A stretch of 64,000 nucleotides of DNA from Macrostomum lignano (taxonomy: Eukaryota). The notes beneath the pieces were generated by a model. The model was not told the origin of the DNA. It ran no database searches and saw only the letters and a program-made list of their open reading frames with translations. The position numbers and the translations under genes are program-made. Positions 177-52,235 of the stretch are shown here, in pieces (the first letter of the stretch is position 1; every line of letters begins with the position of its first letter). Location of the stretch: contig NIVC01000984.1 of the NCBI GenBank assembly GCA_002269645.1, positions 186,001 through 250,000 on the forward strand, in the 5' to 3' direction.

Positions 177-2244
177 CAGGGACCACAAAGCAGCTAGATA
201 CAACCCCTAGATATAAGTCTACGGGTTAGAGACCATTAGAGGTTCAAGGCGCCAGACCAGTGCACACAGCTGCTGTTCTTCATCAATCTGCATCAAATAT
301 AGCGCAGCTTCAGAGCTTATCAATCGACTCTTTCACGGTTCGCAGGCCCAAGTAAAACTTTCCCCAATTTTAACTGAGTGATTGATTTTTTTGTATTTTT
401 CAAGGAAGAAAAGCTAAAAAAAGAGCTGTCATCATATCATCATCACCTATCGAAATTAGCATAATTCATTGAAAAACTCCGACATGAATAATTCATCAGC
501 AACTCAATCGAAGTGCTCAGAAAGTCTAATTCAAACTTCCGGCTTGGAGTTGGAGTAGGTGATGATGGAGCTGTGAGCCTGGCGGCTGACGCAAATGTGC
601 TAATACATGTAAAACTATACCCCCTGCCCAATACTTCCAAAGAATTTTCTTTTTATTCAAAGCCAAAAAGCAATGGGATGCCAGGGATAAATTGCCGGGG
701 TGACGTCACGCATGGGGCAAGAATGAGCAGACAAAATTCGAGGTGCAAATGTCAGATCTCCGAGCTGGCAACCCCCCCCCCCGAAATCGCTCTCTGCTCC
801 AACAACCGCACCCGACAGCTCAGGATTTGAGCATCGAACACGTCGATCTTGATTTCCAGCTGACTCCCCTCTATCATCATCCAGTCTCGCTGTGAAATGA
901 AATTTGAGTCGCCGCACTTATCCGAGTTGAATGCCAGGGGGGATTGGGGCGGGGGGGTCGGGAGCGATCAGCTGACTCTGGCGCAACCTTTGGCTGTGGG
1001 ATATAGATAGGCGGCCCTGTGTGAGGCCTCCGGCGCCTCCCCACAGTCTCTCAAGTCCTGCAGCCCTGCCGGGTGACTCAGCGCCCCTGTTCTCAAATGA
1101 GGAGTGGAAGGTTGGGGATCTGGGATATTATATAGGAGCGGCCTATACGCCCCCTTCCATCATCACACATCCATTTAGCAATCCAGCCTCCCGCGCCCCC
1201 GCCTCATCGAAAGCGTTTTTGTCTCCGGGCGTCGAGCGCCCCCTGCCTCCGTCAAAGCCCCTTGCTTCCATTCCTTGCGCATTCAGCCTGAATGGAGAAT
1301 AATGGGGGATTTCTATTAAGCTCTCCCCATCTCTCTGCAGCCGGGGGTTGCGTGCTCAGCAGACCCATATTATGGATTTGGAAATCGAGGCAAAAACTGG
1401 GAAGGCAAAACTATTCAAGCCCGAAGCTGGTCCATTCTTTTTTCTAAATTCCTTGGCTTTTTTATTCAATCCTGCCCCGGTACACTTGGCCAGCTGGGAC
1501 CATTGTTGAGCGGCAGGCGAATGGTTTTCAATGGCTGCAAGGGCCTCTATATATGAAGTTGTCAGTCCTTATGGAACAATGAAGTCCTTAAACAGCACGC
1601 AGTCTTCATCTCACGGGGACTCTAGGATGAATCATTGTTAGATTTATCTTATATAGTTTTGCAGCAAAAGGAATCGTTATAATAGAGAAAAGTGGCCTTT
1701 GTCACATGTCACTGGTCGGTTTGGACCATAGACATTGATGGATTGGAGGTCCCGAGTGTGCCGACTGTGTATTTTAGCTGCATGGCGCAGGAAGTTTCTG
1801 TTAGGCAAGGCATTGGTCTGCCTTCATTTGGATGTTTTTCTCACGGAAACTTGTGCCAGAGAAGGGAACTGCCTGTTGGGGGGCTATACAGGTATCATGC
1901 TGCTTGGGACACTTCCTCCTCGGCCCCCCACTTGTTCAAACACAAGTGTGTCTCCCTACTTTGGAACACGATAGCGCTAGCTACAGCAGGCAGAGAAAAC
2001 GTATCAGATAGTTGTAATCGGAGTACTTACTGGTAGGCTACGTTGCAGGAACTGTTATTAGCAATAATTAGTTGTTTAAAAATAGCGTTGCTATGCCCAA
2101 GCTTCACATCCGCATCTAATCAGCGCTATTCATTTGATCCGAAATTATTCAGGACTGAGATTGCTTTCAGTTTGAAACTGGACTGGCTGGTTACAGCAGG
2201 CCAACAACACACAGCTTTGCATTGTTGCATGGACTCCTGAGAAG

Positions 2245-3145
2245 GAGAGTAGGGTAGGGAGGAAAGAGAGGAGTAGGGGAGAGAGAAAGAAGGAACAGGG
2301 AGACACGGAGAGAGAGAGAGAGAGAGAGGATAGAGCAAGGACAACTAGACTTGACTAGATATAACGAAGTGTTCCTAATGGTCCTTGGGATAGAGATAGA
2401 GAAAGAAAAGAGAGGAGAGAGGGAGAGAGGGAAGGGATGAAGATGGAGAGAGTGAAGAGATGGAGAGGGAGAGAGGAAAGGGATGGAGATGGAGAGAGTG
2501 AAGAGATGGAGAGGGAGAGAGGAAAGAGATGGAGATAGAGAGAATGAAGAGATGGAGAGGGAGAGAGGAAAGAGATGGAGATGGAGAGAATGAAGAGATG
2601 GAGAGGGAGAGAGGAAAGGGATGGAGATGGAGAGAATGAAGAGATGGAGAGGGAGAGAGGAAAGAGATGGAGATGGAGAGAGTGAAGAGATGGAGAGGGA
2701 GAGAGGAAAGGGATGGAGATGGAGAGAATGAAGAGATGGAGAGGGAGAGAGGAAAGGGATGGAGATGGAGAGAATGAAGAGATGGAGAGGGAGAGAGGAA
2801 AGGGATGGAGATGGAGAGAGTGAAGACAGGGAAGAGGGAGAGAGGGAAGGGATGGCGATGGAGAGAATGAAGAGATGGAGAGGGAGAGAGGGAAGAAGGA
2901 GAGATTGAGAGAAAAGAAATGGGGGGAGAATAAGAGGGGAGAGAGTGAGATGATAGATGAGATGCGAGAAAAAGAGCGGGAAGAGTGGGAAAAGGAGAGA
3001 GAGAGTGAGAGAGAGAGGGAGAGAGAGAGAGGGAGAGAGAGAGGGAGAGAGAGAGAGAGGGAGAGAGAGAGAGTGAGAGTGAGAGAGAGAGAGGGAGAGA
3101 GAGAGAGGGAGAGAGAGGGAGAGAGAGAGAGAGAGAGAGAGACTG
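2245..3145. repeat. Purine-rich GA region with a ~46-bp unit and (GA)n
   Basis: Unit GAGAGGAAAGGGATGGAGATGGAGAGAATGAAGAGATGGAGAGGGA repeats over ~2420-2830; (GA)n/(GAGG) over ~2990-3142. Confidence 0.9.
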
Positions 3146-4197
3146 AGCAGGAGGCGGGAGTGCGTCAGCAGCCTGAAGCACCGAGCACCAACGCAATGGA
3201 ACAGCGAGTGCCAACGCTGGGGTAGCGCGAGAGTCGCATATTAAAAGCCCCCAGCTTTTGAAATTTAACAATTGCGCCTCAGGCGGAGGCAGGCATAGTC
3301 GGAGGCCCGGATCCAGAGTCAGCTCAAGCGCCTAGGAGTGAAGGCAGGGGGGGGAAGGGCGCCCCATGGCGCCTTGTCACAACTGCAACCTCCTCACAAA
3401 TTCCAATAGCTTAGCCGATGCCCCAATTCAAAGGCTTCCTTCTCCCATTATCCCGTAATTAGGGAAGGGGCTTTGGTTGAGTTGGCGAGCGAGGGCTTCA
3501 GGATGCGGGGGGAGCGGCTTGAGCACTCCCAGTGAGAGAAGAACTGGGTCAGAAAATTGCTGATGAGACGGACGACGCAACCAAAGGCTGCGCAACTCCG
3601 AGAGCACACAGTCATGCAATTTGTTTGGGGATCCACGCCGGACACCTGGGGGGGGGGGGGGTAGGGAGGGGAGGGCTGAGCCGGCAGAGGGGGTTCGGGG
3701 AATTCCAGTCAGAAAAAATCCCAGCCCCCACGCAGCCCGGGTCCCTCCTGACGCTGCAGATCGTGAGTCAACCAGCTGTTGTGACAGGACTCCAAAGTCT
3801 TCAGCTCCAGATGGAGGATCGGAGCTTTGGAAAGCGGCCCCGCCTGAGGGTCGAGCCACCTGGGGGAGGATTTCTCAAGCACACACGCACGCATAGCATT
3901 GAGTCGGCTGGGGGGGGGGGTGAGGGCAGGGTTCTCTGTTCCCCTTGTCAGGCAAAGCTGCCTCCGGAGCCGCTCCGCTCCGCTAAGCTAAGCCTCCATA
4001 TGTCCGCTGGGGGGAAACCGGGGAGGGCGCCCCACCACCACTGCTCTCCCTGCCTGTCCCTGCCAGGGCCATGGGGCTGTCAACTCAGGAATGGGGCCTT
4101 TACTAAATCGGATACTCCAGTGAGTCAGTCAGCTGGACGCCTCGGGTTAGAAATCTGGACTGGACGGTCATTTTCTAGACATCTTTTAGTTTAGAAT

Positions 4198-4569
4198 CAG
4201 GGACGTCTCGGGTTATAAATCTGGAAGGTCATATTCTTTCATTCATTTTCTCTCTTTGAGGTCCTCGGGTCGGGTCCTCTAAAACTTCACTATTAGCAAT
4301 CCGACCGTTCAAGGTTTGCGTCTCTTCTCAGGTCTCTTCTGTCTTCTCTCCCATCTTCTCTCACTTATCTCTCATCTCTTCTCTCATCACATCCTTCCTG
4401 TTATCTCCTCTCTCACCTTTTGCTCTCTTCTCTTCTCGCTTCTCCTAATCTCTCATCTCTATTCCAACTTCTTTCCTCTCTCAACTGGCCCCGCGCTAGT
4501 GAGGCATGAGCTAGATTATTTATCTGACCCTTGAAGTAAAAAAAACTTTTTGGGGAAAAACTTCCCCTG
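4198..4569 (+). mobile_element. Degenerate copy of hAT-like MITE family
   Basis: Shares blocks CCTCGGGTC..CTTCAC..TAGCAATCCG..TCTCTTCTCAG, a CT-rich core and the end CCCTTGA(A/G)GTAAAAAA..CTG with the MITE at 29973-30352 (opposite orientation). No TSD found. Confidence 0.45.
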
Positions 4570-5334: not shown

Positions 5335-6232
5335 TCAGATCCAAAATGACAACCCGTATATCCAAAATGGCTCCTACTCAGACCCAAAATGGTTCCACTC
5401 AGACCCAAAATGGCTCTACTCAGATCCAAAATGGCTCCTACTCAGACTCAAAATGGCTCTACTCAGATCCAAAATGGCTCCTACTCAGACTCAAAATGGC
5501 TCTACTCAGATCCAAAATGGCTCCTACTCAGACCCAAAATGGCTCCTACTCAGACCCAAAATGGCTCCTAATCAGACCCAAAATGGCTCCTACTCAGATC
5601 CAAAATGGCTCTACTCAGATCCAAAATGGCTCTACTCAGACCCAAAATGGCTCCTACTCAGACCCAAAATGGCTCTACTCAGATCCAAAATGGCTCTACT
5701 CAGATCCAAAATGGCTCCTACTCAGACCCAAAATGGCTCCTACTCAGACCCAAAATGGCTCCTACTCAGACCCAAAATGGCTCCTACTCAGATCCAAAAT
5801 GGCTCTACTCAGATCCAAAATGGCTCTACTCAGACCCAAAATGGCTCTACTCAGATCCAAAATGGCTCCTACTCAGACCCAAAATAGCTCCTACTCAGAT
5901 CCAAAATGGCTCTACTCAGATCCAAAATGGCTCCTACTCAGATCCAAAATGGCTCCTACTCAGACTCAAAATGGCTCTACTCAGATCCAAAATGGCTCCT
6001 ACTCAGACCCAAAATGGCTCCTACTCAGACCCAAAATAGCTCCTACTCAGATCCAAAATGGCTCCTACTCAGACTCAAAATGGCTCTACTCAGATCCAAA
6101 ATGGCTCTACTCAGATCCAAAATGGCTCCTACTCAGACCCAAAATGGCTCCTACTCAGATCCAAAATGGCTCTACTCAGATCCAAAATGGCTCCTACTCA
6201 GATCCAAAATGGCTCTACTCAGACCCAAAATA
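5335..6232. repeat. 21/22-bp minisatellite CAGA(T/C)CCAAAATGGCTC(C)TACT
   Basis: About 40 interleaved 21- and 22-bp units; the ORFs here are repeat artefacts. Confidence 0.95.
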
Positions 6233-16935: not shown

Positions 16936-16964
16936 TATCTGCCCTCATTGGGGATAGCAGCCAG

Positions 16965-17770
16965 GGTAAAAAACCTTAGAGGGTAGCGACCAGGGTAGAA
17001 CACCTTAGACAGAGGATAGCGGCCTGGGTAGAACACCTTAGACAGAGGATAGCGGCCTGGGTAGAACACCTTAGACAGAGGATAGCGGTCTGGGTAGAAC
17101 ACCTTAGACAGAGGATAGCGGCCTGGGTAGAACACCTTAGACAGAGGATAGCGGCCTGGTTAGAACACCTTAGACAGAGGCTAGCGGTCTGGGTAGAACA
17201 CCTTAGACAGAGGCTAGCGGCCTGGGTAGAACACCTTAGACAGAGAATAGCGGCATGGGTAGAACACCTTAGACAGAGGATAGCGGCCTGGGTAGAACAC
17301 CTTAGACAGAGGATAGCGGCCTGGGTAGAACACCTTAGACAGAGGATAGCGGCCTGGGTAGAACACCTTAGACAGAGGATAGCGGCCTGGGTAGAACACC
17401 TTAGACAGAGGATAGCGGCCTGGGTAGAACACCTTAGACAGAGGATAGCGGCCTGGGTAGAACACCTTAGACAGAGGATAGCGGCCTGGGTAGAACACCT
17501 TAGACAGAGGATAGCGGCCTGGGTAGAACACCTTAGACAGAGGATAGCGGCCTGGGTAGAACACCTTAGACAGAGGCTAGCGGCCTGGGTAGAACACCTT
17601 AGACAGAGGCTAGCGGCCTGGGTAGAACACCTTAGACAGAGGATAGCGGCCTGGGTAGAACACCTTAGACAGAGGCTAGCGGCCTGGGTAGAACACCTTA
17701 GACAGAGGCTAGCGGCCTGGGTAAAACACCTTAGACAGAGGCTAGGGTGGAAAACCAGACAGGGTAGCGA
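16965..17770. repeat. 33-bp minisatellite CTTAGACAGAGGATAGCGGCCTGGGTAGAACAC
   Basis: About 23 near-identical units. Confidence 0.95.
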
Positions 17771-19003: not shown

Positions 19004-20105
19004 TTAAGAGGGCGAGTTGCCTTCCAGTTCGCGTTTCTCATAGTGACTAAAGTCGTCAAAGATGCTGGTACTGTGCCTATAGGACCTGATGATGCCGAAC
19101 ACCTGGCGGCCCTGCTCAATAGGCACGTTTGTGCAGTCGCGAGAATTAGTCACCGGCTTGTTCTCGTTAGTTGCCACCCGGACGTGGCGCAATTGACTAT
19201 TTGGCACGTCCTTAACGTAAATCCATTTGATTTTGAACTCGCCAAGCCATTTATCCTGGCACCAGACGCCAGCATTTTTATTAACGTCAACCTGCGTTAT
19301 CATCTGGGCTACGCCGCAGAAATGGCCGGACCCGTTCACTGAGAAAAGCAGATAGACTCGGCCGCCACGATTCGCTGTCCGACTGAAAGCGCCGTTGAGC
19401 ACCTCGTTGCCGCGCTTTGTACTGCACCAAATCGAATATTTAATAGCTCGATGAATATCGTCTTCGCTGTAGCTTTTAATAACGTAGAACTCTGAGTTGT
19501 CTGGCACGTCGTGCTTAGCCGGATTAATGTCCTGCTCAAGCTGGCGCAGCTGCTCCTCCGATGCAGCCGGCACGGGCTCCAGCGATTGCAACTGGCCACG
19601 ATTGCCAGATGCTGGCTGCTGCTGCTGCTGGTATTGCGGCACGTAGCCCTGACCTGGAGCCATGGAAGCCGCATTGCCGCGAGCCGGCTGCTGCTGTTTC
19701 CCAGCGGCGTGACCTACAACCAGGCCGCCAGTGCCTTTGCCTAGCGCCTTCGGATTGCCAGCCTTGTTGCCAATAGCAACCGGCACGGCCACTGGCTCGC
19801 CGGGCGCCGAGCCGCCAGACGCCGGTTTTTGAGCACCGCCGCTGGGTCCGACAGGCGCCTGAGAGGCGGCAATTTTGGCCCAAGTTTTTGGAGCGGCAGC
19901 GCCGGCTGTCGACGTGCTCAACGCTGGGAAGTCGACAGCTGAACTGTCGGATTGTTGCTGCTGCTGTTGAACGCTAAGACCGGCGATGCCCTGCTCAAGG
20001 ACCGCCACCGAGTCCGCCGTGCCGTTGTTAGCGGACTGCGCGCCGGCTACAGCGGAGGCGGCTGTAGCAGCGGGCTGGTGCGGCATCGGCGCGTAGCCAG
20101 CAGGA

Positions 20106-20143
<38 letters not shown>

Positions 20144-20506
20144 ATGCGCGTAGCCGGGCCACACAGTCAAGTCGCCACTCTCGAAGCTGTTAGCAGCCGC
20201 GGCGGCTGCGGCAGCTGCAACGGGATTCCACATGCCGCCACCGTATCCGGTCTGATGCGGCGAGGCCTGCATATAGCCGGGGTAGCCGTACGAGTTGCCC
20301 TGATAGTAGCCCTCGGGGCTGTACTGCTGCTGCTGGGCGTAGTCGGCCGCCGGAGCGCCGGTTGACCAAACGGATCCAACGTCGACGCCGATTTGGCCGC
20401 CAGAGTAAGCAAAATTCTGCATCAGATAGGGCGCCTGGTGTTGACTGTAGTCTCCCATGGTCTGCTTGTTTAGCATCCGTTCTGTTAGGTTCAAGTCTGC
20501 ATGCAT
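19004..20506 (-). CDS. ythdf: YTH domain family (YTHDF) cytoplasmic m6A reader
   Basis: C-terminal YTH domain: [92 protein letters not shown] low-complexity N-terminus as in DF-type proteins. Start uncertain (ATG at 20506, 20476 or 20458; frame open to 20590). Confidence 0.93.
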
Positions 20507-21743
20507 TTCATAAAAAGAGTTGCTTAGATGAGACAAACCTTTGAAGCTTGACGGGATGGATGGAAGTCGGCTTGGTCTCCATTCGAACACCCCATAATCA
20601 CAGCAGCAAAATCTTATTGCTTATCTCACTCAGACAAACTTTGCTGGGAAAGTTTGCTATCAAAAACAGCAATTTTACATAGTCACTATCCTATTCTATA
20701 AAATTAGATTTTTTAAAATAGATGCTGTCTCTTGCTAATAATTTTTTTATTTAACTAATTGCAAAGATACATTTTTGTGAATAGTGGTATATAAGTAGGT
20801 GTATAATATATATAGATATGACCAATATACAAATTAGTATAAATAATTTATTGTCCATTGACAACTATACAGTGTATATAGTAAATGCTATATGTAGGTC
20901 TATACATGTGCAATAGCCAGCTGGCTGGCAAGGGGCCAAGCCAAGGTAAGTCACAAAAAATGCCTATCCAAATAATATAGATGTAGCACTAGTTAGATGA
21001 CAAGGCATCTAGCCTTAAGTCAAAGTTACTACTGTTGTTTACCCAAAATTATATTAATTTTTGCTGAGGTTTTTTTATAGGTAAGTCACATTTTTGGTCA
21101 AAGAGTAAGTTGCACTACCAGTATAAATCAGGGGGTTGCACATGTATGTGTTGGTCTAGACCCAAAACTCTTACCCTATGCCTGTGTGAACAATAAACCA
21201 AAAAATGTTGTTCTTTTAGAGTTAAGACCTAGGTCTTTTTAGTCAGTGATACTTGGGGCACAGAATGGCATATTTAGAAAACAAATTTAAATATTTAAAC
21301 AAAAGAGCCAAGCACATCAATAAGATATAATTATTTATCACTTCTATTACTAGACATTAAAGGCAGTGAGAAACTAAAAATTGTAAATAATTTTTGGAAT
21401 GTTTGGAAATTAAATATAAATAATTGAATATAGTATACTTGAAATAATTTGATGTTTTTTCTTTCTGTGATAGGGGGCATAGGCCTCAATTTCTACTTTT
21501 TAGAAAGTTGCATTTTAAAATATTACTATTGTTATATTACACAAATATAAGAAATATTTCTTATATTCAATATATTCAATATATTATTTATATCATTGTT
21601 TGTTTTAAAAAGTTATAGAAAAATTTTACTATAAAAAGAAGCCAGTTGAAAGCCAAGAAAAATAAACTTGTTTTCTGTTCCTCTTCTTGTTTAGTTTTTC
21701 AAAGCTTTTTTACTTTGTATACTCTACTAGATATTCTTGGTCC

Positions 21744-21845
21744 TGCCGCATTTGGCCGCCGCAGCAGTTAAGCGCGGCTCTCCACTCTCACCACGAGGAG
21801 GTAGCGGCATTTATCTGCACCGTGGTGCAAATAAATTAAGACTGC
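21744..21845 (-). ncRNA. HDV-like (delta-like) self-cleaving ribozyme
   Basis: Minus strand: P2 UGCCGC/GCGGCA, P3 ACC/GGU, L3 UCCUCGU, P1 3' strand GAGAGU then GG (P1.1), P4 GCCGC..GCGGC, J4/2 C-AAA (C at 21754), 12-bp J1/2 hairpin. The P1 5' strand pairs only imperfectly. Confidence 0.8.
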
Positions 21846-21911
21846 AAATAAATTAAGACTGCAAATAAATTAAGACTGCAAATAAATTAAGACTGCAAAT
21901 AAATTAAGACT
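21827..21911. repeat. Five exact copies of GCAAATAAATTAAGACT at the inversion junction
   Basis: Copies start at 21827, 21844, 21861, 21878 and 21895. Confidence 0.97.
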
Positions 21912-21917
21912 GCTGTC

Positions 21918-22898
21918 ATGGCGCTGTACCACGGCACGACGGCTGCTGTCTCAACACCGGACGGCCTATCGGATTTCTTCGAGACATCCTCCGGGGTGCT
22001 CCAGGGAGATACGCTAGCGCCGTTCCTATTTATTCTGGTGCTTGACTGGGTGCTACGGACTGCTCTGCCTTCCAACGACGACGGCTTCCTGCTGCGGTGA
22101 CGCGTGGGTCGACGCCAACCGGAGAGACGGCTCAGTGTGCTTGGCTACGCCGATGACCTCGCCCTGCTGTCCTCGACCGTCGAGGGCGCCCAACGACAGC
22201 TGGATAGGCTGGTTGCCGTTGCGGCGAGCGTCGGCCTGGTGGTCAACACGCAGAAGACCGTCGTGCTATGCGTGCCGGACGACACCGAGGCTGCAATCTT
22301 CTGCCGAGGCGCTGACGGACAGGCGAGTGAGCTTCCAAGATGTCAGCAGTTTGTCTACCTCGGCGGTCTGGTTCCCGACGTCCGCGAGGATCTGCGGCGT
22401 CGCCGTGGACTTGCTTGGGCTGCCTTTCGTTCTAAAAGGTCAGTCCTGCAGTCTGAGGCCCTACCGGACCGCCAGAGGGCGGCGCTGTTCCAGGCGGTGA
22501 TCGAGACCGTCCTGTTATACAACACCGAGACCTGGACGCTGACAGACTCGCTCGAGGCTCAAGTCGACGCGGCGCACGCTGGCCTGCTGCGCGCCGCCTT
22601 CAAGATCGGCAATGAGCGAGTCACCAACACGGCGCTCTATCATCGCGCCGGCCTGGCCCGTCCTAGCGATCTGCTGCGCCGTCGGCGACTCCAGCTGGCA
22701 GGCCACGTCATCCGCGCCGAGGCCTACTGTCCGGAGCCGGTGCAGGAGGTGCTGCTACTTACGTTGCAGGCACCCTACCGGCGGGGACAGGCGAGGACTC
22801 GGCGCTACGTCGACTGTCTGCTGGCTGACGCCGGCGCCCCGGACTCTGCCGGCGGTGCGGCTTTTGTTCGCGCCCAAGCTTTGAAGCGCACCATCTGA
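21918..22898 (+). pseudogene. Truncated RTE reverse transcriptase (C-terminal part) with in-frame stop
   Basis: ORFs 21918-22100 and 22104-22898 share a frame, separated by TGA at 22098-22100 (likely CGA>TGA). Confidence 0.9.
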
Positions 22899-25800
22899 CG
22901 GTGCTTTTGTGAACTGGCAGCGTACTCTGTTGTTGTTGTTGTTGTTGTAGATATTCTATTTGGAGACAAAAGTCTAATCAGCTTCAGAGCTTATAATTGC
23001 CATCATGTTACTTATTTCAAGTAGTAGATAGCAACTTAAGAATAGCCCTAAGATTGGGAGAATTCAATCCATTCTCAAAGAATGAGATACCTAGAATTAG
23101 AATCTGAGAAATTGCCTTTAGAAGGCAGAAATCCTACCAAAGAATAGAATAGTCTAGACTCTAAGAAACCTGCCTCAAGGCAGAAAACCTAGCAAGTAAA
23201 CTATGAACCTTTGATCCTAGGAATACCAAAAAATGAGAGAACAAAAATCCTTAGAGGAGTATAAGGATAGAGTAGACAGTGCTATAAGACTGCTTAGGCT
23301 AGAAATATAGTATATATACATACACTATTATATACATGCCCAATACCTGTCCAACCCATATGAACTAGATGGGTGAAATGGTTACCGGCCAAGTTAATTT
23401 CCAAAATCGAAAATACAAAAATGAAAAATTGGGGGAAGAAAGAAAGGAGATGAAGATAAAAGGAGAATAAAAGAATACAAGAGAGAGGGGGAAAGGAAAG
23501 AGAAAAAAAGAGAAGAAAAGAGAAAAAGGCAAGAAAAGTCATATACAAAGTGAAAATTAAGTCACATTCGAGGGAACTAAGTTGCAATTGAGAGGAACTA
23601 GGTCACAAATATGGACAAAACTAAGTCATACTAGACGGGTGAAATTTTGAGGTTAGGCATATATGCACTACCAATAAATTCATACGCTACCAATAAAAGT
23701 ACATAACTAACAGCAGTAAGATCATTTCAGAGGATAGAAAATATCCCTATTACAACATTTGGTATCAGCAACAGAATAATTTAAATAGAGAGCAATCACT
23801 AGTACAACAACTTGGTGATAGATTAATCATTTGGGTGACAAGACATTTTGATAACAGTTGTTTCAGTGATAAGAAAGTCATTTCAATAACAAGAAATATA
23901 CCCTTTGGTGATAGCCATTTCATTTTTAAATAGTAAAATTACTTGCAAATCTTAAGGGATATCAAACCTTACCTTTTTGTAATTTTCTGCAATAGCTGAA
24001 TATTGGTTTATTTAATTTTGTTTATTTACAATTCCAAGTTGTGATCTTTTGAATTTATATGTTTTCCAATCCAATTCCAATTGTGTCTAGTGAATATCTC
24101 TGTTTTTCTTGTAGTCAGCATTTCATTTCATGAAGATTCTCTATAGATCCTTATTGGAATAAGTTGACAAAACGCGGACGACTGTCCATTGCATTTTCGG
24201 ATTCTCCTGGTATTGTATCGCGCAACAATGGTGTCAAATGGTGTGTCGCATTGCGTTACACTGTGGAAACCTAGTGTCATCATGCGTCGCATCGCGCAAC
24301 GCAACAGTGTGGCAACTTGGCGGCTGGCATTGTCATGTGTCGTGTTGCGGCCTGAATCTGTAGCAAAAACCTTGCAAACTGTGTTTCATTGTAATCTGTT
24401 CATGGTTGTTTCTCGGTATTTAAATGTTTTAGACATATTTGATAATAACTAGTTCTTGAATTGTTCTTTTTTATTTTGATAGTAAAGTAACTAATACTTC
24501 AAATATAATGACTATTTGTCACCAAAATGTGTCACTGAAATGACTTGTCACTGAAACAACTTGGTACCAAAATGACTAAGCGTATTTTACCTTTGGTAAT
24601 AGCTATAGAACAATTCTACAACCAAGGCAAAAGGGACTCCTATATCACTTCTTTTGTATATTTATTTTCCATTAAGTGAGATATTTCACTTGAAAACTAT
24701 ACACTGTTTTAGAGTTGTTCACTAAATCAGGATAAGCAAATTGTTATTAACAAATTACAAGTTTATAAGTTTGGCAAGCAAATATTATAGATAGACCTAA
24801 TTCAAATCCTTACGGCAAACTATAACAGGTGTTTATAGGAGGCCTAATCCTATCTAATATCCTAGGTATTTATTATAATATTCTATATAGTCTATATGAG
24901 GTTCTACAAGATATTGGTAAATATAGTGCTAAAACTAAAGAATAGATTATATTACAGTATTTATAATTAAATCATTTTTGTCTTTAAAAATCCAATTTAA
25001 AATCAACCCTGATGCTTAGCTCAATGCTGTCAGCTATTAGGAGCTATTGAAAAACAAAGTGCCACCATGGCTAAATCAGCACTACCCAAGGGACCAATAT
25101 AGATTATATATATAATATTCTAGAAACAGCAAGATGGTGCACTTTCATATACTGCAATAACCAAATAGACCTTCCTGTGAGAAAATACTTTGGCTAATTA
25201 TTAGCCAAAGGACTTCTGGTCATCTTAATCTACTGGAATATTATTTCTAAGTACAAGTAGAGCACAATGTGTTCATTCTTTAGAATGAGCAGTGCAATTA
25301 TACAAAAGAAACGAAAATTCCGAAATATTTGTAATTTTGTGTAAATAAGTACTTTTTAAATTTTATTTAGAATCAGAAAATTAACAAATGCCACGTATGC
25401 AATTTAACGAATAGGAAAAATCAAAATGGTTTCTAGTCTATGGGCATGAAGTTTTATCACCTTCGATGCTCACCGTTCAGTTTTAATTTCGCTTTTTTTG
25501 TTTTTTTGGAATACAAGTTGAAATGAAATTTGCAACGACTCTATAAGAATCTGTCAAAAGTTAATTATTAATTAATAATTTTATTTAATATTATAAAGGT
25601 AATAGTACAGGGGTCCTTGCGTCTAATTTCCTACACCAGTCAACCAGTTTTAGCATTTTACATCATTAGTTTTGACCGTTTGATTCAATAAAACGAATCA
25701 GGCCATGCTCGGTGCTCGCCCATGCAACATTTCGACGTTCTCCGACGTACATGTACATTATCCGACGTACCCGAAGCAGGGACGACTGTACAGTTATATA

Positions 25801-31109: not shown

Positions 31110-32660
31110 GCGGTGGCTATGGAAGGTGCTAAGAGAGGACAGCGGTGGCTATGGAAGGGGCTAAGAGAGGACACCGCGAAGGATTAGAGAGAGAGAGGAC
31201 AGCGGTGCTCACCGAAGGATTAGAGAGAGAGGACAGCGGTGCTCACCGAAGGATGAGAGAGAGGACAGCGGTGCTCACCGAAGGATTAGAGAGAGAGGAC
31301 AGCGGTGCTCACCGAAGGATTAGAGAGAGAGAGGACAGCGGTGCTCACCGAAGGATGAGAGAGAGGACAGCGGTGCTCATCGAAGGATTAGAGAGAGAGG
31401 ACAGCGGTGCTCACCGAAGGATTAGAGAGAGAGGACAGCGGTGCTCATCGAAGGATTAGAGAGAGGACAGCGGTGCTCACTGAAGGATTAGAGAGAGAGG
31501 ACAGCGGTGCTCATCGAAGGATTAGAGAGAGAGGACAGCGGTGCTCATCGAAGGATTAGAGAGAGAGGACAGCGGTGCTCACCGAAGGATTAGAGAGAGA
31601 GGACAGCGGTGCTCATCGAAGGATTAGAGAGAGAGGACAGCGGTGCTCATCGAAGGATTAGAGAGAGAGGACAGCGGTGCTCACCGAAGGATTAGAGAGA
31701 GAGGACAGCGGTGCTCACCGAAGGATGAGAGAGAGAGGACAGCGGTGCTCACCGAAGGATTAGAGAGAGAGGACAGCGGTGCTCACTGAAGGATTAGAGA
31801 GAGAGGACAGCGGTGCTCACCGAAGGATTAGAGAGAGAGGACAGCGGTGCTCACCGAAGGATGAGAGAGAGGACAGCGGTGCTCACCGAAGGATTAGAGA
31901 GAGAGGACAGCGGTGCTCACCGAAGGATTAGAGAGAGAGGACAGCGGTGCTCACCGAAGGATTAGAGAGAGAGGACAGCGGTGCTCACTGAAGGATTAGA
32001 GAGAGAGGACAGCGGTGCTCACTGAAGGATTAGAGAGAGAGGACAGCGGTGCTCACCGAAGGATTAGAGAGAGAGGACAGCGGTGCTCACCGAAGGATGA
32101 GAGAGAGGACAGCGGTGCTCACCGAAGGATTAGAGAGAGAGGACAGCGGTGCTCACCGAAGGATTAGAGAGAGAGAGGACAGCGGTGCTCACCGAAGGAT
32201 GAGAGAGAGAGGACAGCGGTGCTCATCGAAGGATTAGAGAGAGAGAGGACAGCGGTGCTCATCGAAGGATTAGAGAGAGAGGACAGCGGTGCTCACCGAA
32301 GGATTAGAGAGAGAGGACAGCGGTGCTCACCGAAGGATTAGAGAGAGAGGACAGCGGTGCTCACCGAAGGATGAGAGAGAGGACAGCGGTGCTCACCGAA
32401 GGATGAGAGAGAGGGCAGCGGTGCTCATCGAAGGATTAGAGAGAGAGGACAGCGGTGCTCACCGAAGGATGAGAGAGAGGACAGCGGTGCTCACCGAAGG
32501 ATTAGAGAGAGAGAGGACAGCGGTGCTCACCGAAGGATGAGAGAGAGGACAGCGGTGCTCACCGAAGGATTAGAGAGAGAGGACAGCGGTGCTCACCGAA
32601 GGATTAGAGAGAGAGGACAGCGGTGCTCACCGAAGGATTAGAGAGAGGACAGCGGTGCTC
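31110..32660. repeat. ~34-bp minisatellite (GA)nGGACAGCGGTGCTCACCGAAGGATTA
   Basis: About 45 units with variable GA count and internal palindrome CGGTG-CT-CACCG. Confidence 0.95.
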
Positions 32661-33512: not shown

Positions 33513-34419
33513 AGCCACATCCATCTCTTGATAATTATGATTATTCCCACCCAGTCTTCAATCCAGTCTCTACCCGCCAACAATTTCGGCAGGGGTCCAT
33601 AAATTTCGGCATCTAACCGTGATAAACCCGTGGCGTCACTCTGATCACATCTGATAAGCAGGTCTTCGCCTCTGCTCATTTGCATATCTGAGCAGGTCGA
33701 CTAGAAAAAGTGACTCAGCCTTCATCTCCAGAATCTTCAGAAGTCGTTGAAGCGTTAAGCTGTGATGGGGATTATTGGGGGCGTGGATTTGAAGGCATTC
33801 GTCATATTGGGGCTTTGAAGGGATTTTAGGCAGAGAGCAGACCGCCCCTGTAACCATGCCAATGAAGCCCGCTTCTGCCTTCATCTCGCAGTAGGCTCCC
33901 ACAGGACCCCAGCTGCCTCGCCTCATCTCCCCTGTCGAGGCATTCGCTTCCTTTTTTATTTTTCTCCCAACAACCCGCTCCCTCCTCTCTCTCTCCTCTA
34001 GCCAGACATTTTACTCTGGTTTCTCTGTCGGCCCGCCCCCTTCCGCCCACTCGACTCTCTTTAACCGGACTGAACCGTCAACGAGGTAAATTGAATTTTT
34101 GAGTCCTCCCCTCGCTGAGCAGACGAGTGACTCACCCGAAGCGTGATTTGATGAGTGCGGGCCTCACTGAGTCAAACTGGCTTCATGTTCTGCGGCTGCA
34201 CTGCCTTATTCTGCAGTGAGCTTTTCTGAGGTCGCTTGACCGCGGGCTTGACGGGGTTTGCGTGAGGCGCTCGACAAACTCGACAGCTTTATTGCCTCGG
34301 GTGAGCGGGGCGGGAGACTTCAGCTGTCCCAGGCGTCAATCCTGATTGCGTAAGAATTCCCATAGTTTAGCGTCACTTTCAACTAGGCTGTGTCTGGTGC
34401 TGGGAATAAAGGAAACCCG

Positions 34420-35462
<1,043 letters not shown>

Positions 35463-43747: not shown

Positions 43748-44278
<531 letters not shown>

Positions 44279-44299
44279 TCCAATAACACTCTCCCAGAT

Positions 44300-48061: not shown

Positions 48062-52235
<4,174 letters not shown>

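What the first reader, a model, noticed from the sequence alone, without database searches (positions are those of the whole stretch)
21744..21845. HDV-like self-cleaving ribozyme on the minus strand inside an RTE insertion
Seen in sequence: the minus strand reads GCAGUCUU-A-[AUUUAUUUGCAC CACG GUGCAGAUAAA]-UGCCGCU-ACC-UCCUCGU-GGU-GAGAGU-GG-AGA-GCCGCGCUUAACUGCUGCGGC-GGC-CAAA-UGCGGCA. It contains P2, P3 with the hallmark CCUCCUCGUGG loop, P1.1 (CC with GG), P4 and a C-A-A-A J4/2 with the candidate catalytic C at 21754. P1 pairs only as G1-U, C2-G, a 2-nt bulge, then UCUU/GAGA. Established: HDV-like ribozymes process the 5' ends of R2 and RTE retrotransposon transcripts. Inference: this is the 5' end of a flatworm RTE family. 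No ORF track or gene model shows it.
Basis: partly seen in the sequence, partly recalled or inferred. Interest (0 to 1): 0.85.

Follow-up and report, generated by a model that had tools for sequence, protein, structure and literature searches.

The report
Inverted RTE 5' end with HDV-like ribozyme
The sequence is a real HDV-like ribozyme fold that normally sits at the very start of a flatworm (Macrostomum) RTE jumping gene. Here it was captured upside-down next to the tail of the same element, so it is a new example of a known arrangement, and this particular copy may be catalytically weak.

Summary
Rfam's drz-agam-1 model matches it below threshold (29.5 bits against a cut-off of 37; E 7e-4 in a 601-base search).

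Three related near-complete or 5'-intact RTE copies from metagenome contigs (L001, L124, L131) carry the homologous module in sense orientation, upstream of and in frame with the endonuclease/RT reading frame. Across the four sequences:
- The nested double pseudoknot (P1, P2, P3, P1.1, P4, plus a J1/2 hairpin) is 96.9% paired, against 31-47% in slid controls.
- Five of six P1 pairs change on both sides.
- All three relatives begin exactly at the predicted +1 G.

A Macrostomum lignano protein (A0A1I8G3L1) joins the peptide encoded by the window's ribozyme in frame to an RTE whose RT matches the window's plus-strand fragment.

In the window the module is inverted. One insertion (21738-22947), flanked by a 10-bp duplication (TAGATATTCT), consists of the inverted first ~176 nt of the element joined to its last 1034 nt. 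This is a twin-priming product.

- The conserved J4/2 C is 21755, not 21754.
- The homologous cleavage site is 5' of G21842, not G21845.
- This copy's P1 has only four contiguous pairs.

Cleavage itself is untested. Verdict: a new member of a known kind.

The parts
21728..21737 (+). Left copy of the 10-bp target-site duplication, TAGATATTCT. Its last two bases (21736-21737) overlap element-derived sequence, giving a 2-nt microhomology.
   Evidence: Read directly. It is identical to 22948-22957. The element-derived GGACCAAG runs to 21736, by homology with L131 and P0081.
21736..21743 (-). Element sequence just 3' of the ribozyme, GGACCAAG (codons R-T-K). This is the presumed internal priming site of the inverted cDNA.
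   Evidence: It matches L131 GGACCAAGCGCGG and the M. lignano peptide ...KCGRTKRGQRS.
21744..21750 (-). P2 3' strand, UGCGGCA.
   Evidence: helix 3: 92.9% paired, with two one-sided changes and one two-sided change.
21751..21757 (-). J4/2, GGCCAAA. The column conserved as C in all four sequences is 21755, followed by N-A-A. This is the candidate catalytic C.
   Evidence: Alignment A5: GGCCAAA / UGCAAAC / UGCCAAU / UGCCAAC. The Rfam alignment also places the model's C on 21755.
21758..21778 (-). P4 hairpin, GCCGCGC-UUAACU-GCUGCGGC.
   Evidence: The stem is invariant and the loop differs in length and sequence among relatives.
21782..21783 (-). GG of P1.1, pairing with CC 21798-21797 in L3.
   Evidence: Invariant in all four sequences.
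21784..21789 (-). P1 3' strand, GAGAGU.
   Evidence: In the relatives the homologous six bases pair perfectly with the repeat unit.
21790..21802 (-). P3 (ACC/GGU) enclosing the canonical 7-nt L3, UCCUCGU.
   Evidence: Identical to the drz-agam-1 consensus. It occurs once in the window.
21803..21810 (-). P2 5' strand, UGCCGCU, preceded by an A. AUG 21810-21808 is the start codon of the element's reading frame, so the frame runs through the ribozyme.
   Evidence: the frames are open from this AUG into the endonuclease domain in L001 and L124. The window reads MPLPPRGESGEPRLTAAAAKCGRTK.
21809..21836 (-). J1/2 hairpin (equivalent to the peripheral helix P1.2), 12 bp with loop CACG.
   Evidence: z -5.95; also present in all three relatives, z -5.2 to -6.1. 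(helix 2: 100% paired).
21837..21842 (-). P1 5' strand by homology, GUCUUA, with the predicted cleavage site 5' of G21842.
   Evidence: L001, L124 and L131 each start at the homologous G.
21829..21913 (-). Five perfect tandem copies of the 17-nt unit GCAGTCTTAATTTATTT. Each carries a P1 5' strand and half of the J1/2 hairpin arm.
   Evidence: Homologous arrays with different unit sequences occur in L001 (3 units), L124 (4, plus 1 degenerate) and L128; L131 has a single unit.
21909..21913 (.). Inversion junction. These bases can be read either as the start of the distal unit or as RT coding sequence (S/T-A codons), so they form a microhomology zone.
21914..22898 (+). Sense 3' part of the same RTE. 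It is the C-terminal RT region of the ORF, with one in-frame TGA at 22098-22100 and the stop codon at 22896-22898.
22899..22947 (+). Short 3' UTR ending in (GTT)6G at 22929-22947. This is the element's 3' end.
   Evidence: The same (GTT)n end is seen in L001 and L002.
22948..22957 (+). Right copy of the target-site duplication, TAGATATTCT.

Best explanation
Positions 21738-22947 are one dead-on-arrival insertion of a Macrostomum RTE-type non-LTR retrotransposon, made by a twin-priming-like event.

How the insertion formed (inferred from its anatomy):
- First-strand cDNA, primed at the (GTT)n 3' end, copied the last 1034 nt. This is the sense part, 21914-22947.
- The other end of the staggered break primed inside the RNA, at ...GGACCAAG just 3' of the ribozyme, and copied the first ~176 nt to the RNA's 5' end. 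This is the inverted part, 21913-21736.
- The two cDNAs were joined, and about 2.1 kb of the middle of the element was lost.

What the inverted piece is. It is the family's 5' terminal module: one or more 17-nt units that carry the P1 5' strand, a stable J1/2 hairpin, and an HDV-like nested double-pseudoknot core that contains the ORF's AUG in its P2 strand.

What the module does in intact source elements (inferred). It cuts the element RNA out of read-through host transcripts 5' of the first P1 nucleotide. Cleavage would use the J4/2 cytosine (21755 here) and Mg2+, as in other HDV-like ribozymes. This defines the element's 5' end. The module may also help translation start at the AUG embedded in it.

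Shown:
- the sequence itself;
- the fold's conservation and covariation;
- its position in sense at the 5' ends of relatives;
- the coincidence of element ends with the predicted cleavage site;
- the target-site duplication and the inverted architecture.

Inferred:
- catalysis;
- the twin-priming route;
- the translation role.

In its present place the copy has no retrotransposon to serve. With only four contiguous P1 pairs, it is probably weak or inactive.
For: The fold:
- Rfam drz-agam-1 scores 29.5 bits, E 7e-4.
- In the four-sequence alignment A5 with the pseudoknotted structure, 96.9% of cells pair against 31-47% when slid. The covariation score is 0.292, reached by 0 of 500 shuffles.
- P1 changes on both sides at five of six pairs: GUAUCU/GGAUAC, GACCCA/UGGGUC, GUCUUG/CAAGAC.
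- The P1 3' strand is coding, but its amino acids are not conserved (ES, GY, WV, QD), so the pairing rather than the peptide is what is kept.
- The J4/2 C-N-A-A and the P1.1 CC/GG are invariant.

Position at the element 5' end:
- L001 module at 27-189, then ORF with RVT_1, 3.3 kb in all, ending in (GTT)n.
- L124 module at 1528-1729, then Exo_endo_phos and RVT_1.
- L131 module at 153-265, then the ORF.
- All three start at the predicted +1 G, with unrelated sequence upstream.

The window's own family. M. lignano A0A1I8G3L1 contains SGEPRLTAAAAKCGRTK. That is 100% identical to the translation of 21786->21736 on the minus strand. It lies in frame ahead of an endonuclease+RT whose RT matches 21909-22394 on the plus strand.

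The insertion:
- 10-bp direct repeat at 21728-21737 and 22948-22957.
- Only one RTE copy in the window.
- The (GTT)n end is shared with L001 and L002.
- There is microhomology at both junctions.

Literature:
- HDV-like ribozymes process RTE 5' ends (PMC3774820 and PMC6765202, both citing Ruminski et al. 2011).
- A stable J1/2 helix activates RTE-associated drz-Agam-2 ribozymes (PMC4908430).
Against: - No cleavage assay has been done.
- The Rfam score is below the curated threshold, and the gathering-mode scan finds nothing.
- The window's P1 is poor. In the homologous register, two of six positions do not pair and three are wobbles. The best alternative is four contiguous pairs.
- The three relatives with perfect P1 all have a 19-34-nt insert inside L3, and L131 has G instead of U at the first L3 position. 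These are departures from the canonical active site whose effect on catalysis is unknown.
- Only four full sequences were available, and P2 and P4 hardly vary. Part of their conservation could come from the overlapping reading frame.
- The deletion between the two arms (~2.1 kb) is larger than I recall being typical of L1 twin priming. That comparison is from memory and was not checked.
Confidence: 0.8

Rival explanations
1. The conserved module is a structured 5' leader or coding element that does not self-cleave, for example a binding site for the element's protein or an internal ribosome entry structure. On this reading its HDV-like appearance reflects ancestry or convergence, and the 5' ends are set by transcription initiation at the CAG of each unit.
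For: - The ORF starts inside the module, so part of the conservation is coding.
- The relatives carry large L3 inserts, and one lacks the first L3 U.
- The window copy has a weak P1.
- The unit junction GCA|G resembles an initiator core (my reading of the sequence, untested).
- Rfam is below threshold, and no HDV-like hit appears in L001.
Against: - P1 pairs a non-coding strand with a coding strand and is kept perfect through complete sequence turnover in three lineages. A non-catalytic leader has no obvious need for that particular pseudoknot, together with invariant CC/GG and C-N-A-A.
- L131 lacks the GCA before its +1 G, yet still starts at that G.
Confidence: 0.12
2. There were two separate events. 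A small ribozyme-bearing non-autonomous element (SINE-like, sharing the RTE 5' module) inserted on the minus strand, next to an independently 5'-truncated RTE copy on the plus strand.
For: RTE elements are known to mobilise SINEs (from memory). The two arms are in opposite orientation, with a 2.1-kb gap in element coordinates.
Against: - A single 10-bp duplication brackets the composite, and neither arm has its own.
- The minus-strand arm has no 3' tail of its own. It stops 8 nt after the ribozyme, in sequence that continues as ORF in L131 and in the M. lignano protein.
- The arms abut with no intervening DNA.
Confidence: 0.05
3. It is a chance resemblance to an HDV-like motif in repeat-rich DNA.
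For: There is no hit at Rfam gathering thresholds. Rescaled to the whole window and all families, the E-value is only about 0.07.
Against: Homologous modules with the same architecture and compensatory changes occur in four further contigs from different samples.
Confidence: 0.01
4. The inverted ribozyme has been co-opted to cleave the transcript of the downstream YTH-domain gene. That gene is on the same strand, and its large exon starts ~1.15 kb downstream.
For: Same orientation and proximity.
Against: There is no evidence that the gene's transcript covers 21744-21845. P1 is weak in this copy. The insertion looks young, with one stop codon in 327 codons. No conservation data are available.
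Confidence: 0.02

Closest known systems
HDV-like ribozymes at the 5' ends of RTE retrotransposons (drz-Agam-2 family and others; Ruminski et al. 2011, as cited in PMC3774820, PMC6765202 and PMC4908430)
   Same: - Nested double-pseudoknot core at the extreme 5' end of an APE+RT single-ORF element.
- Cleavage site coincides with the element's first nucleotide.
- A stable helix in J1/2 (P1.2).
- The reading frame is open through the ribozyme.
   Different: - Flatworm host.
- 6-bp P1.
- The start codon lies inside the P2 strand.
- The P1 5' strand lies in a 17-nt unit that is often tandemly repeated.
- Relatives carry a helix inserted in L3.
- The window copy is inverted and detached from its ORF.
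drz-agam-1 (Rfam RF01787)
   Same: It is the best Rfam match. P3/L3 ACCUCCUCGUGGU is identical to the consensus, and P2, P4 and J4/2 align.
   Different: The score is 29.5 bits against a gathering score of 37. The model places the P1 5' strand inside what is here the J1/2 hairpin, where it cannot pair. The 3' strand is one base shorter.
R2 and L1Tc HDV-like ribozymes (PMC3774820, PMC6765202)
   Same: They process the 5' end of a co-transcript, and a role in translation of the uncapped RNA has been proposed.
   Different: They belong to other retrotransposon clades. R2 is specific to rDNA sites and often cleaves upstream within the 28S sequence.
Twister-variant ribozymes of Perere-3, the RTE-clade element of Schistosoma mansoni (PMC8501958)
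   Same: A flatworm RTE-clade element with a 5' self-cleaving ribozyme and non-specific APE-driven insertion with target-site duplications.
   Different: A different ribozyme class (twister against HDV-like). Two flatworm RTE lineages would therefore use different catalytic folds for the same job.
Twin-priming 5' inversions of mammalian L1 (Ostertag and Kazazian 2001; from memory, not checked here)
   Same: An inverted 5' arm joined to a sense 3' arm of one element, flanked by one target-site duplication, with microhomology at the junctions.
   Different: The inverted arm here is the very 5' end of the RNA, and ~2.1 kb is missing between the arms. The element is an RTE with a (GTT)n tail rather than poly(A).

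Membership tests
HDV-like self-cleaving ribozymes | Nested double pseudoknot with helices in the order P1-P2-P3-P1-P1.1-P4-P2. | tested here: met
   All helices are found in order. Across four homologues, 96.9% of cells pair against 31-47% when slid.
HDV-like self-cleaving ribozymes | A stable P1 (6-7 bp) whose first nucleotide is the cleavage site. | tested here: inconclusive
   P1 is a perfect 6 bp in L001, L124 and L131. The window copy has only four contiguous pairs, at -2.4 kcal/mol.
HDV-like self-cleaving ribozymes | A conserved cytosine in J4/2 followed by N-A-A. | tested here: met
   The C column (window 21755) and the AA are invariant in four sequences, and also in the partial L129.
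HDV-like self-cleaving ribozymes | A short closed L3 (about 7-8 nt, U-C-C-...-G) supplying CC for P1.1. | tested here: met
   The window has UCCUCGU, identical to drz-agam-1. This is not met in the relatives: L001, L124 and L131 have 19-34-nt inserts after the CC.
HDV-like self-cleaving ribozymes | A score at or above the gathering threshold of an Rfam HDV-like family. | tested here: not met
   No hit at gathering thresholds. The best is drz-agam-1 at 29.5 bits against 37. L001 has no hit at E<=1.
HDV-like self-cleaving ribozymes | Mg2+-dependent site-specific self-scission that is abolished by mutating the catalytic C. | not testable with these tools
   This needs an in vitro transcription and cleavage assay.
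RTE-clade non-LTR retrotransposon | A single ORF with an N-terminal APE-type endonuclease followed by RT, about 3.3 kb long, with a very short 3' UTR ending in a simple repeat rather than poly(A). | tested here: met
   Exo_endo_phos and RVT_1 in L124 and RVT_1 in L001. The L001 element is ~3.3 kb. (GTT)n ends are seen in the window, L001 and L002.
RTE-clade non-LTR retrotransposon | Phylogenetic placement of the RT within the RTE clade. | not tested
   No reference set of clade RTs was available. The named relatives are only labelled 'Reverse transcriptase domain-containing protein'.
Twin-priming 5' inversion | An inverted 5' arm and a sense 3' arm from one element, bracketed by one target-site duplication. 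| tested here: met
   Arms at 21736-21913 (-) and 21914-22947 (+). TAGATATTCT at 21728-21737 and 22948-22957. Both arms match one M. lignano protein.
Twin-priming 5' inversion | Microhomology at the internal priming site and at the inversion junction. | tested here: inconclusive
   AG at 21736-21737 is shared by the element and the duplication. Bases 21909-21913 are readable as either arm.

The most novel reading that the evidence does not exclude
The relatives with perfect P1 (L001, L124, L131) may be active ribozymes in which L3 is opened by an in-frame 19-34-nt helix. That would give P3, a CC bulge for P1.1, and an extra helix. If so, this is a structural subclass of HDV-like ribozymes that motif descriptors and Rfam models miss. 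It would be coupled to a start codon built into P2 and to tandem arrays of interchangeable P1 substrate strands that set or regenerate the element's 5' end.
Probability: 0.35. Interest if true: 0.65.

Novelty: new member of a known kind. Interest (0 to 1): 0.45.

Why it matters
- It extends HDV-like 5' processing of RTE elements to a free-living flatworm, Macrostomum lignano. The only flatworm RTE studied so far (Perere-3 of Schistosoma) uses twister variants. The same job in one phylum would therefore be done by two different ribozyme folds.
- The family offers natural experiments on the HDV fold: helix inserts inside L3, a start codon inside P2, a coding P1 strand that covaries with a non-coding one, and repeated substrate strands.
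- The window copy is a clear example of a twin-priming-type inversion in an RTE. It happens to preserve the RNA's 5' terminus.
- For annotation, it explains an orphan ribozyme-like motif lying antisense to an RT fragment and upstream of a YTH-domain gene.

Tried and rejected
- **Metagenome DNA scan.** I used a P4/P2 pattern. It returned 120 GC-rich bacterial chance matches, and none was homologous.
- **Rfam on L001-L003**. No HDV-like hit, because of the L3 insert.
- **Contigs L002, L003, L125, L126, L127, L130 and L132.** They are 5'-truncated, start inside the ORF, or (L125/L130 lineage) have a different, longer 5' region with no module.
- **L128.** An L001-like copy with an internal deletion from the L3 insert to P4.
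- **L129.** Keeps only P4, J4/2 and P2 3'.
- **Viral-contig scan**. It gave one hit, L133, on a bacterial or phage contig. P2 and P1 are absent and there is no RTE, so I rejected it as pattern-selected chance.
- **Search of protein representatives with P0078**. It found only five proteins, so no survey of L3-insert lengths was possible.
- **The Rfam model's own placement of the P1 5' strand** (UGCAGAU at 21819). Rejected because it cannot pair with GAGAGU.
- **In-register P1 for the window.** It scores +6.3 kcal/mol. None is convincing.
- **Ruminski et al. 2011** (PMC3308841). Not held in the library, so it is cited only through papers that cite it.

Full report
**Observation.** The elements of an HDV-like ribozyme are all present, in the canonical order:
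- a candidate P1 5' strand in GCAGUCUUA (21845-21837);
- a 12-bp hairpin in J1/2 (21836-21809; -13.1 kcal/mol, z -5.95);
- P2 UGCCGC/GCGGCA (21809-21804 with 21749-21744);
- P3 ACC/GGU around a 7-nt L3, UCCUCGU (21802-21790);
- the P1 3' strand GAGAGU (21789-21784);
- GG for P1.1 (21783-21782);
- the P4 hairpin (21778-21758);
- J4/2 GGCCAAA (21757-21751).

Rfam finds nothing in the window at its curated thresholds. In E-value mode on 601 bases, drz-agam-1 (RF01787) matches 21819-21746 on the minus strand at 29.5 bits against a cut-off of 37, with E 7e-4. The P3/L3 13-mer is identical to the consensus, and that 13-mer is unique in the window.

First, the P1 5' strand sits in a 17-nt unit, GCAGTCTTAATTTATTT, repeated five times without a mismatch (21913-21829). 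Second, the neighbouring reverse-transcriptase coding sequence is on the opposite, plus strand.

**What the insertion is.**
- From 21914 to 22898 the plus strand encodes the C-terminal RT region of a non-LTR element. It has one in-frame TGA at 22098-22100, then a 49-nt 3' UTR ending in (GTT)6G at 22947.
- The 10-mer TAGATATTCT occurs immediately after that tail (22948-22957), and again at 21728-21737, just beyond the 3' end of the minus-strand module.
- The window holds no other copy of this element.
- So one target-site duplication brackets a composite. It is an inverted piece of ~176 nt (21736-21913, minus strand) joined directly to a sense piece of 1034 nt (21914-22947, plus strand).

**Relatives.** The RT fragment's named relatives are all Macrostomum lignano proteins. 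Many unnamed ones lie on short metagenome contigs. Through protein searches and contig look-ups I obtained the following.
- L001 (JGI, 3389 bp). It is a ~3.3-kb element with ORF 447-3263 (RVT_1), ending in (GTT)n.
- L124 (ENA, 4418 bp). It has Exo_endo_phos at 1990-3123 and RVT_1 at 3160-4416.
- L131 (ENA, 537 bp), carrying the start of the ORF.

In all three, a module homologous to the window's minus-strand sequence lies in sense orientation at the extreme 5' end. L128 is a deleted copy and L129 a 5'-truncated one that keeps P4-J4/2-P2. A covariance model built from the four full modules finds only these sequences.

**Evidence for the fold.** I aligned the four modules (A5) and scored the pseudoknotted structure.
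- 96.9% of cells form standard pairs, against 31-47% when the 3' partners are slid by 1-3 columns.
- The covariation score is 0.292, reached by 0 of 500 shuffles.
- P1 carries most of the signal. It is GUAUCU/GGAUAC in L001, GACCCA/UGGGUC in L124 and GUCUUG/CAAGAC in L131. Each is a perfect 6-bp helix, and five of six pairs change on both sides.
- P2 and P3 show one-sided changes: U-A to U.G, G-C to G.U, A-U to G.U.
- The J1/2 hairpin is present in all four (z -5.2 to -6.1).
- The P4 stem is invariant, with different loops.
- The P1.1 CC/GG and a J4/2 C-N-A-A are invariant.

The conserved C corresponds to window 21755.

**Coding overlap.** The element's reading frame starts inside the ribozyme. 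The A that ends J1/2 and the UG that opens P2 form the AUG (window 21810-21808). The frame is open from there into the endonuclease domain in L001 and L124. The window reads MPLPPRGESGEPRLTAAAAKCGRTK.

This overlap means that some of the conservation of P2 and P4 may be coding. However, the P1 3' strand encodes non-conserved residues (ES, GY, WV, QD) and still pairs with a non-coding strand. That argues for selection on the RNA.

**The 5' ends.** L001 begins ...ttattgat|GTATCT, L124 ...ctgttc|GACCCTC and L131 ...cacc|GTCTTG. In each case the first element base is the first base of P1, which is the position where HDV-like ribozymes cut (PMC4908430 for the rule).

**Link to the window's own family.** A search of protein representatives with P0078 found the M. 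lignano protein A0A1I8G3L1. It contains SGEPRLTAAAAKCGRTK, 100% identical to the translation of 21786-21736 on the minus strand. In that protein the peptide continues in frame into the basic region, the endonuclease and an RT. The RT matches 21909-22394 on the plus strand almost residue for residue, outside gene-model gaps. Both arms of the window's insertion therefore come from one element family, in which the ribozyme heads the ORF in sense.

**How the inverted copy arose (inference).** The anatomy is that of twin priming. One cDNA was primed at the 3' tail. A second was primed by the other end of the staggered break, inside the RNA, and extended to the RNA's 5' end. The two were then joined.
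- The element-derived GGACCAAG runs to 21736 and overlaps the duplication by AG.
- At the other junction, bases 21909-21913 can be read as either arm. The RNA's 5' end could therefore have been at the predicted cleavage site of the distal unit, but this cannot be fixed without the source element's DNA.
- About 2.1 kb of the element is missing between the arms.

**Weak points.**
- The window's P1 is poor. In the homologous register, two of six positions do not pair and three are wobbles. The best option is four contiguous pairs, UCUU/GAGA, at -2.4 kcal/mol, against -4.8 to -9.5 in the relatives.
- Conversely, the three relatives with perfect P1 have an in-frame insert of 19-34 nt between the CC of L3 and the P3 3' strand. 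The insert can fold as a helix stacked on P3 while leaving CC free. L131 also has G for the first L3 base.
- I found no description of such L3 inserts, and Rfam does not recognise L001. Whether either form cleaves is unknown.
- Only four full sequences were available.

**Comparison with what is known.**
- HDV-like ribozymes at the 5' ends of RTE, R2, L1Tc and other non-LTR elements are established. So are their proposed roles in releasing the element RNA from co-transcripts and in translation (PMC3774820, PMC6765202).
- A stable J1/2 helix (P1.2) accelerates RTE-associated drz-Agam-2 ribozymes by nearly three orders of magnitude (PMC4908430). The hairpin found here is in the same position.
- In Schistosoma mansoni, the RTE-clade element Perere-3 uses twister variants instead (PMC8501958).
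- No paper linking Macrostomum to such ribozymes was found.

The finding is therefore a new member of a known kind. Several family features deserve experiments: the L3 inserts, the AUG in P2 and the tandem substrate-strand units.

**Verdict.**
- My confidence that this is the inverted 5' end of an RTE carrying an HDV-like fold is about 0.8-0.9.
- My confidence that the family's module self-cleaves is about 0.7.
- My confidence that this particular copy is active is about 0.3.

Noticed in passing
window 19004-20590 (-): A 528-aa open frame with a C-terminal YTH domain (PF04146, E 9e-46) and a long low-complexity Q/P/A-rich N-terminal part. It is a YTHDF-like host gene exon, on the same strand as the inverted ribozyme and ~1.15 kb downstream of it.
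   Followed up: partly
window 21810-21736 (-); L001 88-; L124 1643-; L131 184-: The RTE reading frame starts at an AUG formed by the end of J1/2 and the start of P2, so the ribozyme encodes the first 22-33 residues (MPxPP...GEPR..AAAA(N/K)xG). The L3 inserts of the relatives are multiples of three (+30, +21 and +15 nt).
   Followed up: partly
window 21829-21913; L001 27-77; L124 1528-1615; L128 1-50: There are tandem arrays of a 17-nt unit at the element's 5' end. The unit sequence differs between lineages but always carries the P1 5' strand, and the array starts at unit position 4. L131 has a single unit. How the arrays arise is unexplained. Possibilities are cleavage at a distal unit, RT template jumping, or DNA slippage. 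The GCA|G unit junction also resembles an initiator core.
   Followed up: partly
L001 97-134; L124 1657-1681; L131 199-217: Hairpin-forming inserts of 19-34 nt lie inside L3 of an otherwise HDV-like core, in exactly the copies whose P1 is perfect. The window copy has the canonical 7-nt L3 but a poor P1.
   Followed up: partly
window 48388-52228, 34419-35170 and 43749-44280: Very long simple repeats: (AGAC)n-type over 3.8 kb (AT skew up to 0.93), (GACA)188 and (CTAT)133.
   Followed up: no
window 16952-17745, 31177-32660, 5362-6231, and about 25 other arrays: The window is unusually dense in minisatellites, with units of 11-46 bp and tens of copies each. The 33-bp array at 16952-17745 creates spurious long ORFs on the minus strand.
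   Followed up: no
L124 363-1382 (-): A mariner/Tc1-type transposase gene (Transposase_1 and HTH domains) lies just upstream of the RTE copy on the ENA contig. This fits a eukaryotic, repeat-rich origin for these 'metagenome' contigs.
   Followed up: no
L125 380-1140; L130 1-280: A more distant RTE lineage (56-59% identity in the endonuclease) has a different, longer 5' region. Neither the family model nor inspection finds a module there. Its 5' end may use another solution.
   Followed up: partly
L133 9962-10062: A bacterial or phage contig matched the P4/J4/2 pattern and by coincidence encodes MPRNPPDLDEPRRKAAAAN. P1 and P2 are absent and there is no RTE. I judged it a chance match.
   Followed up: yes
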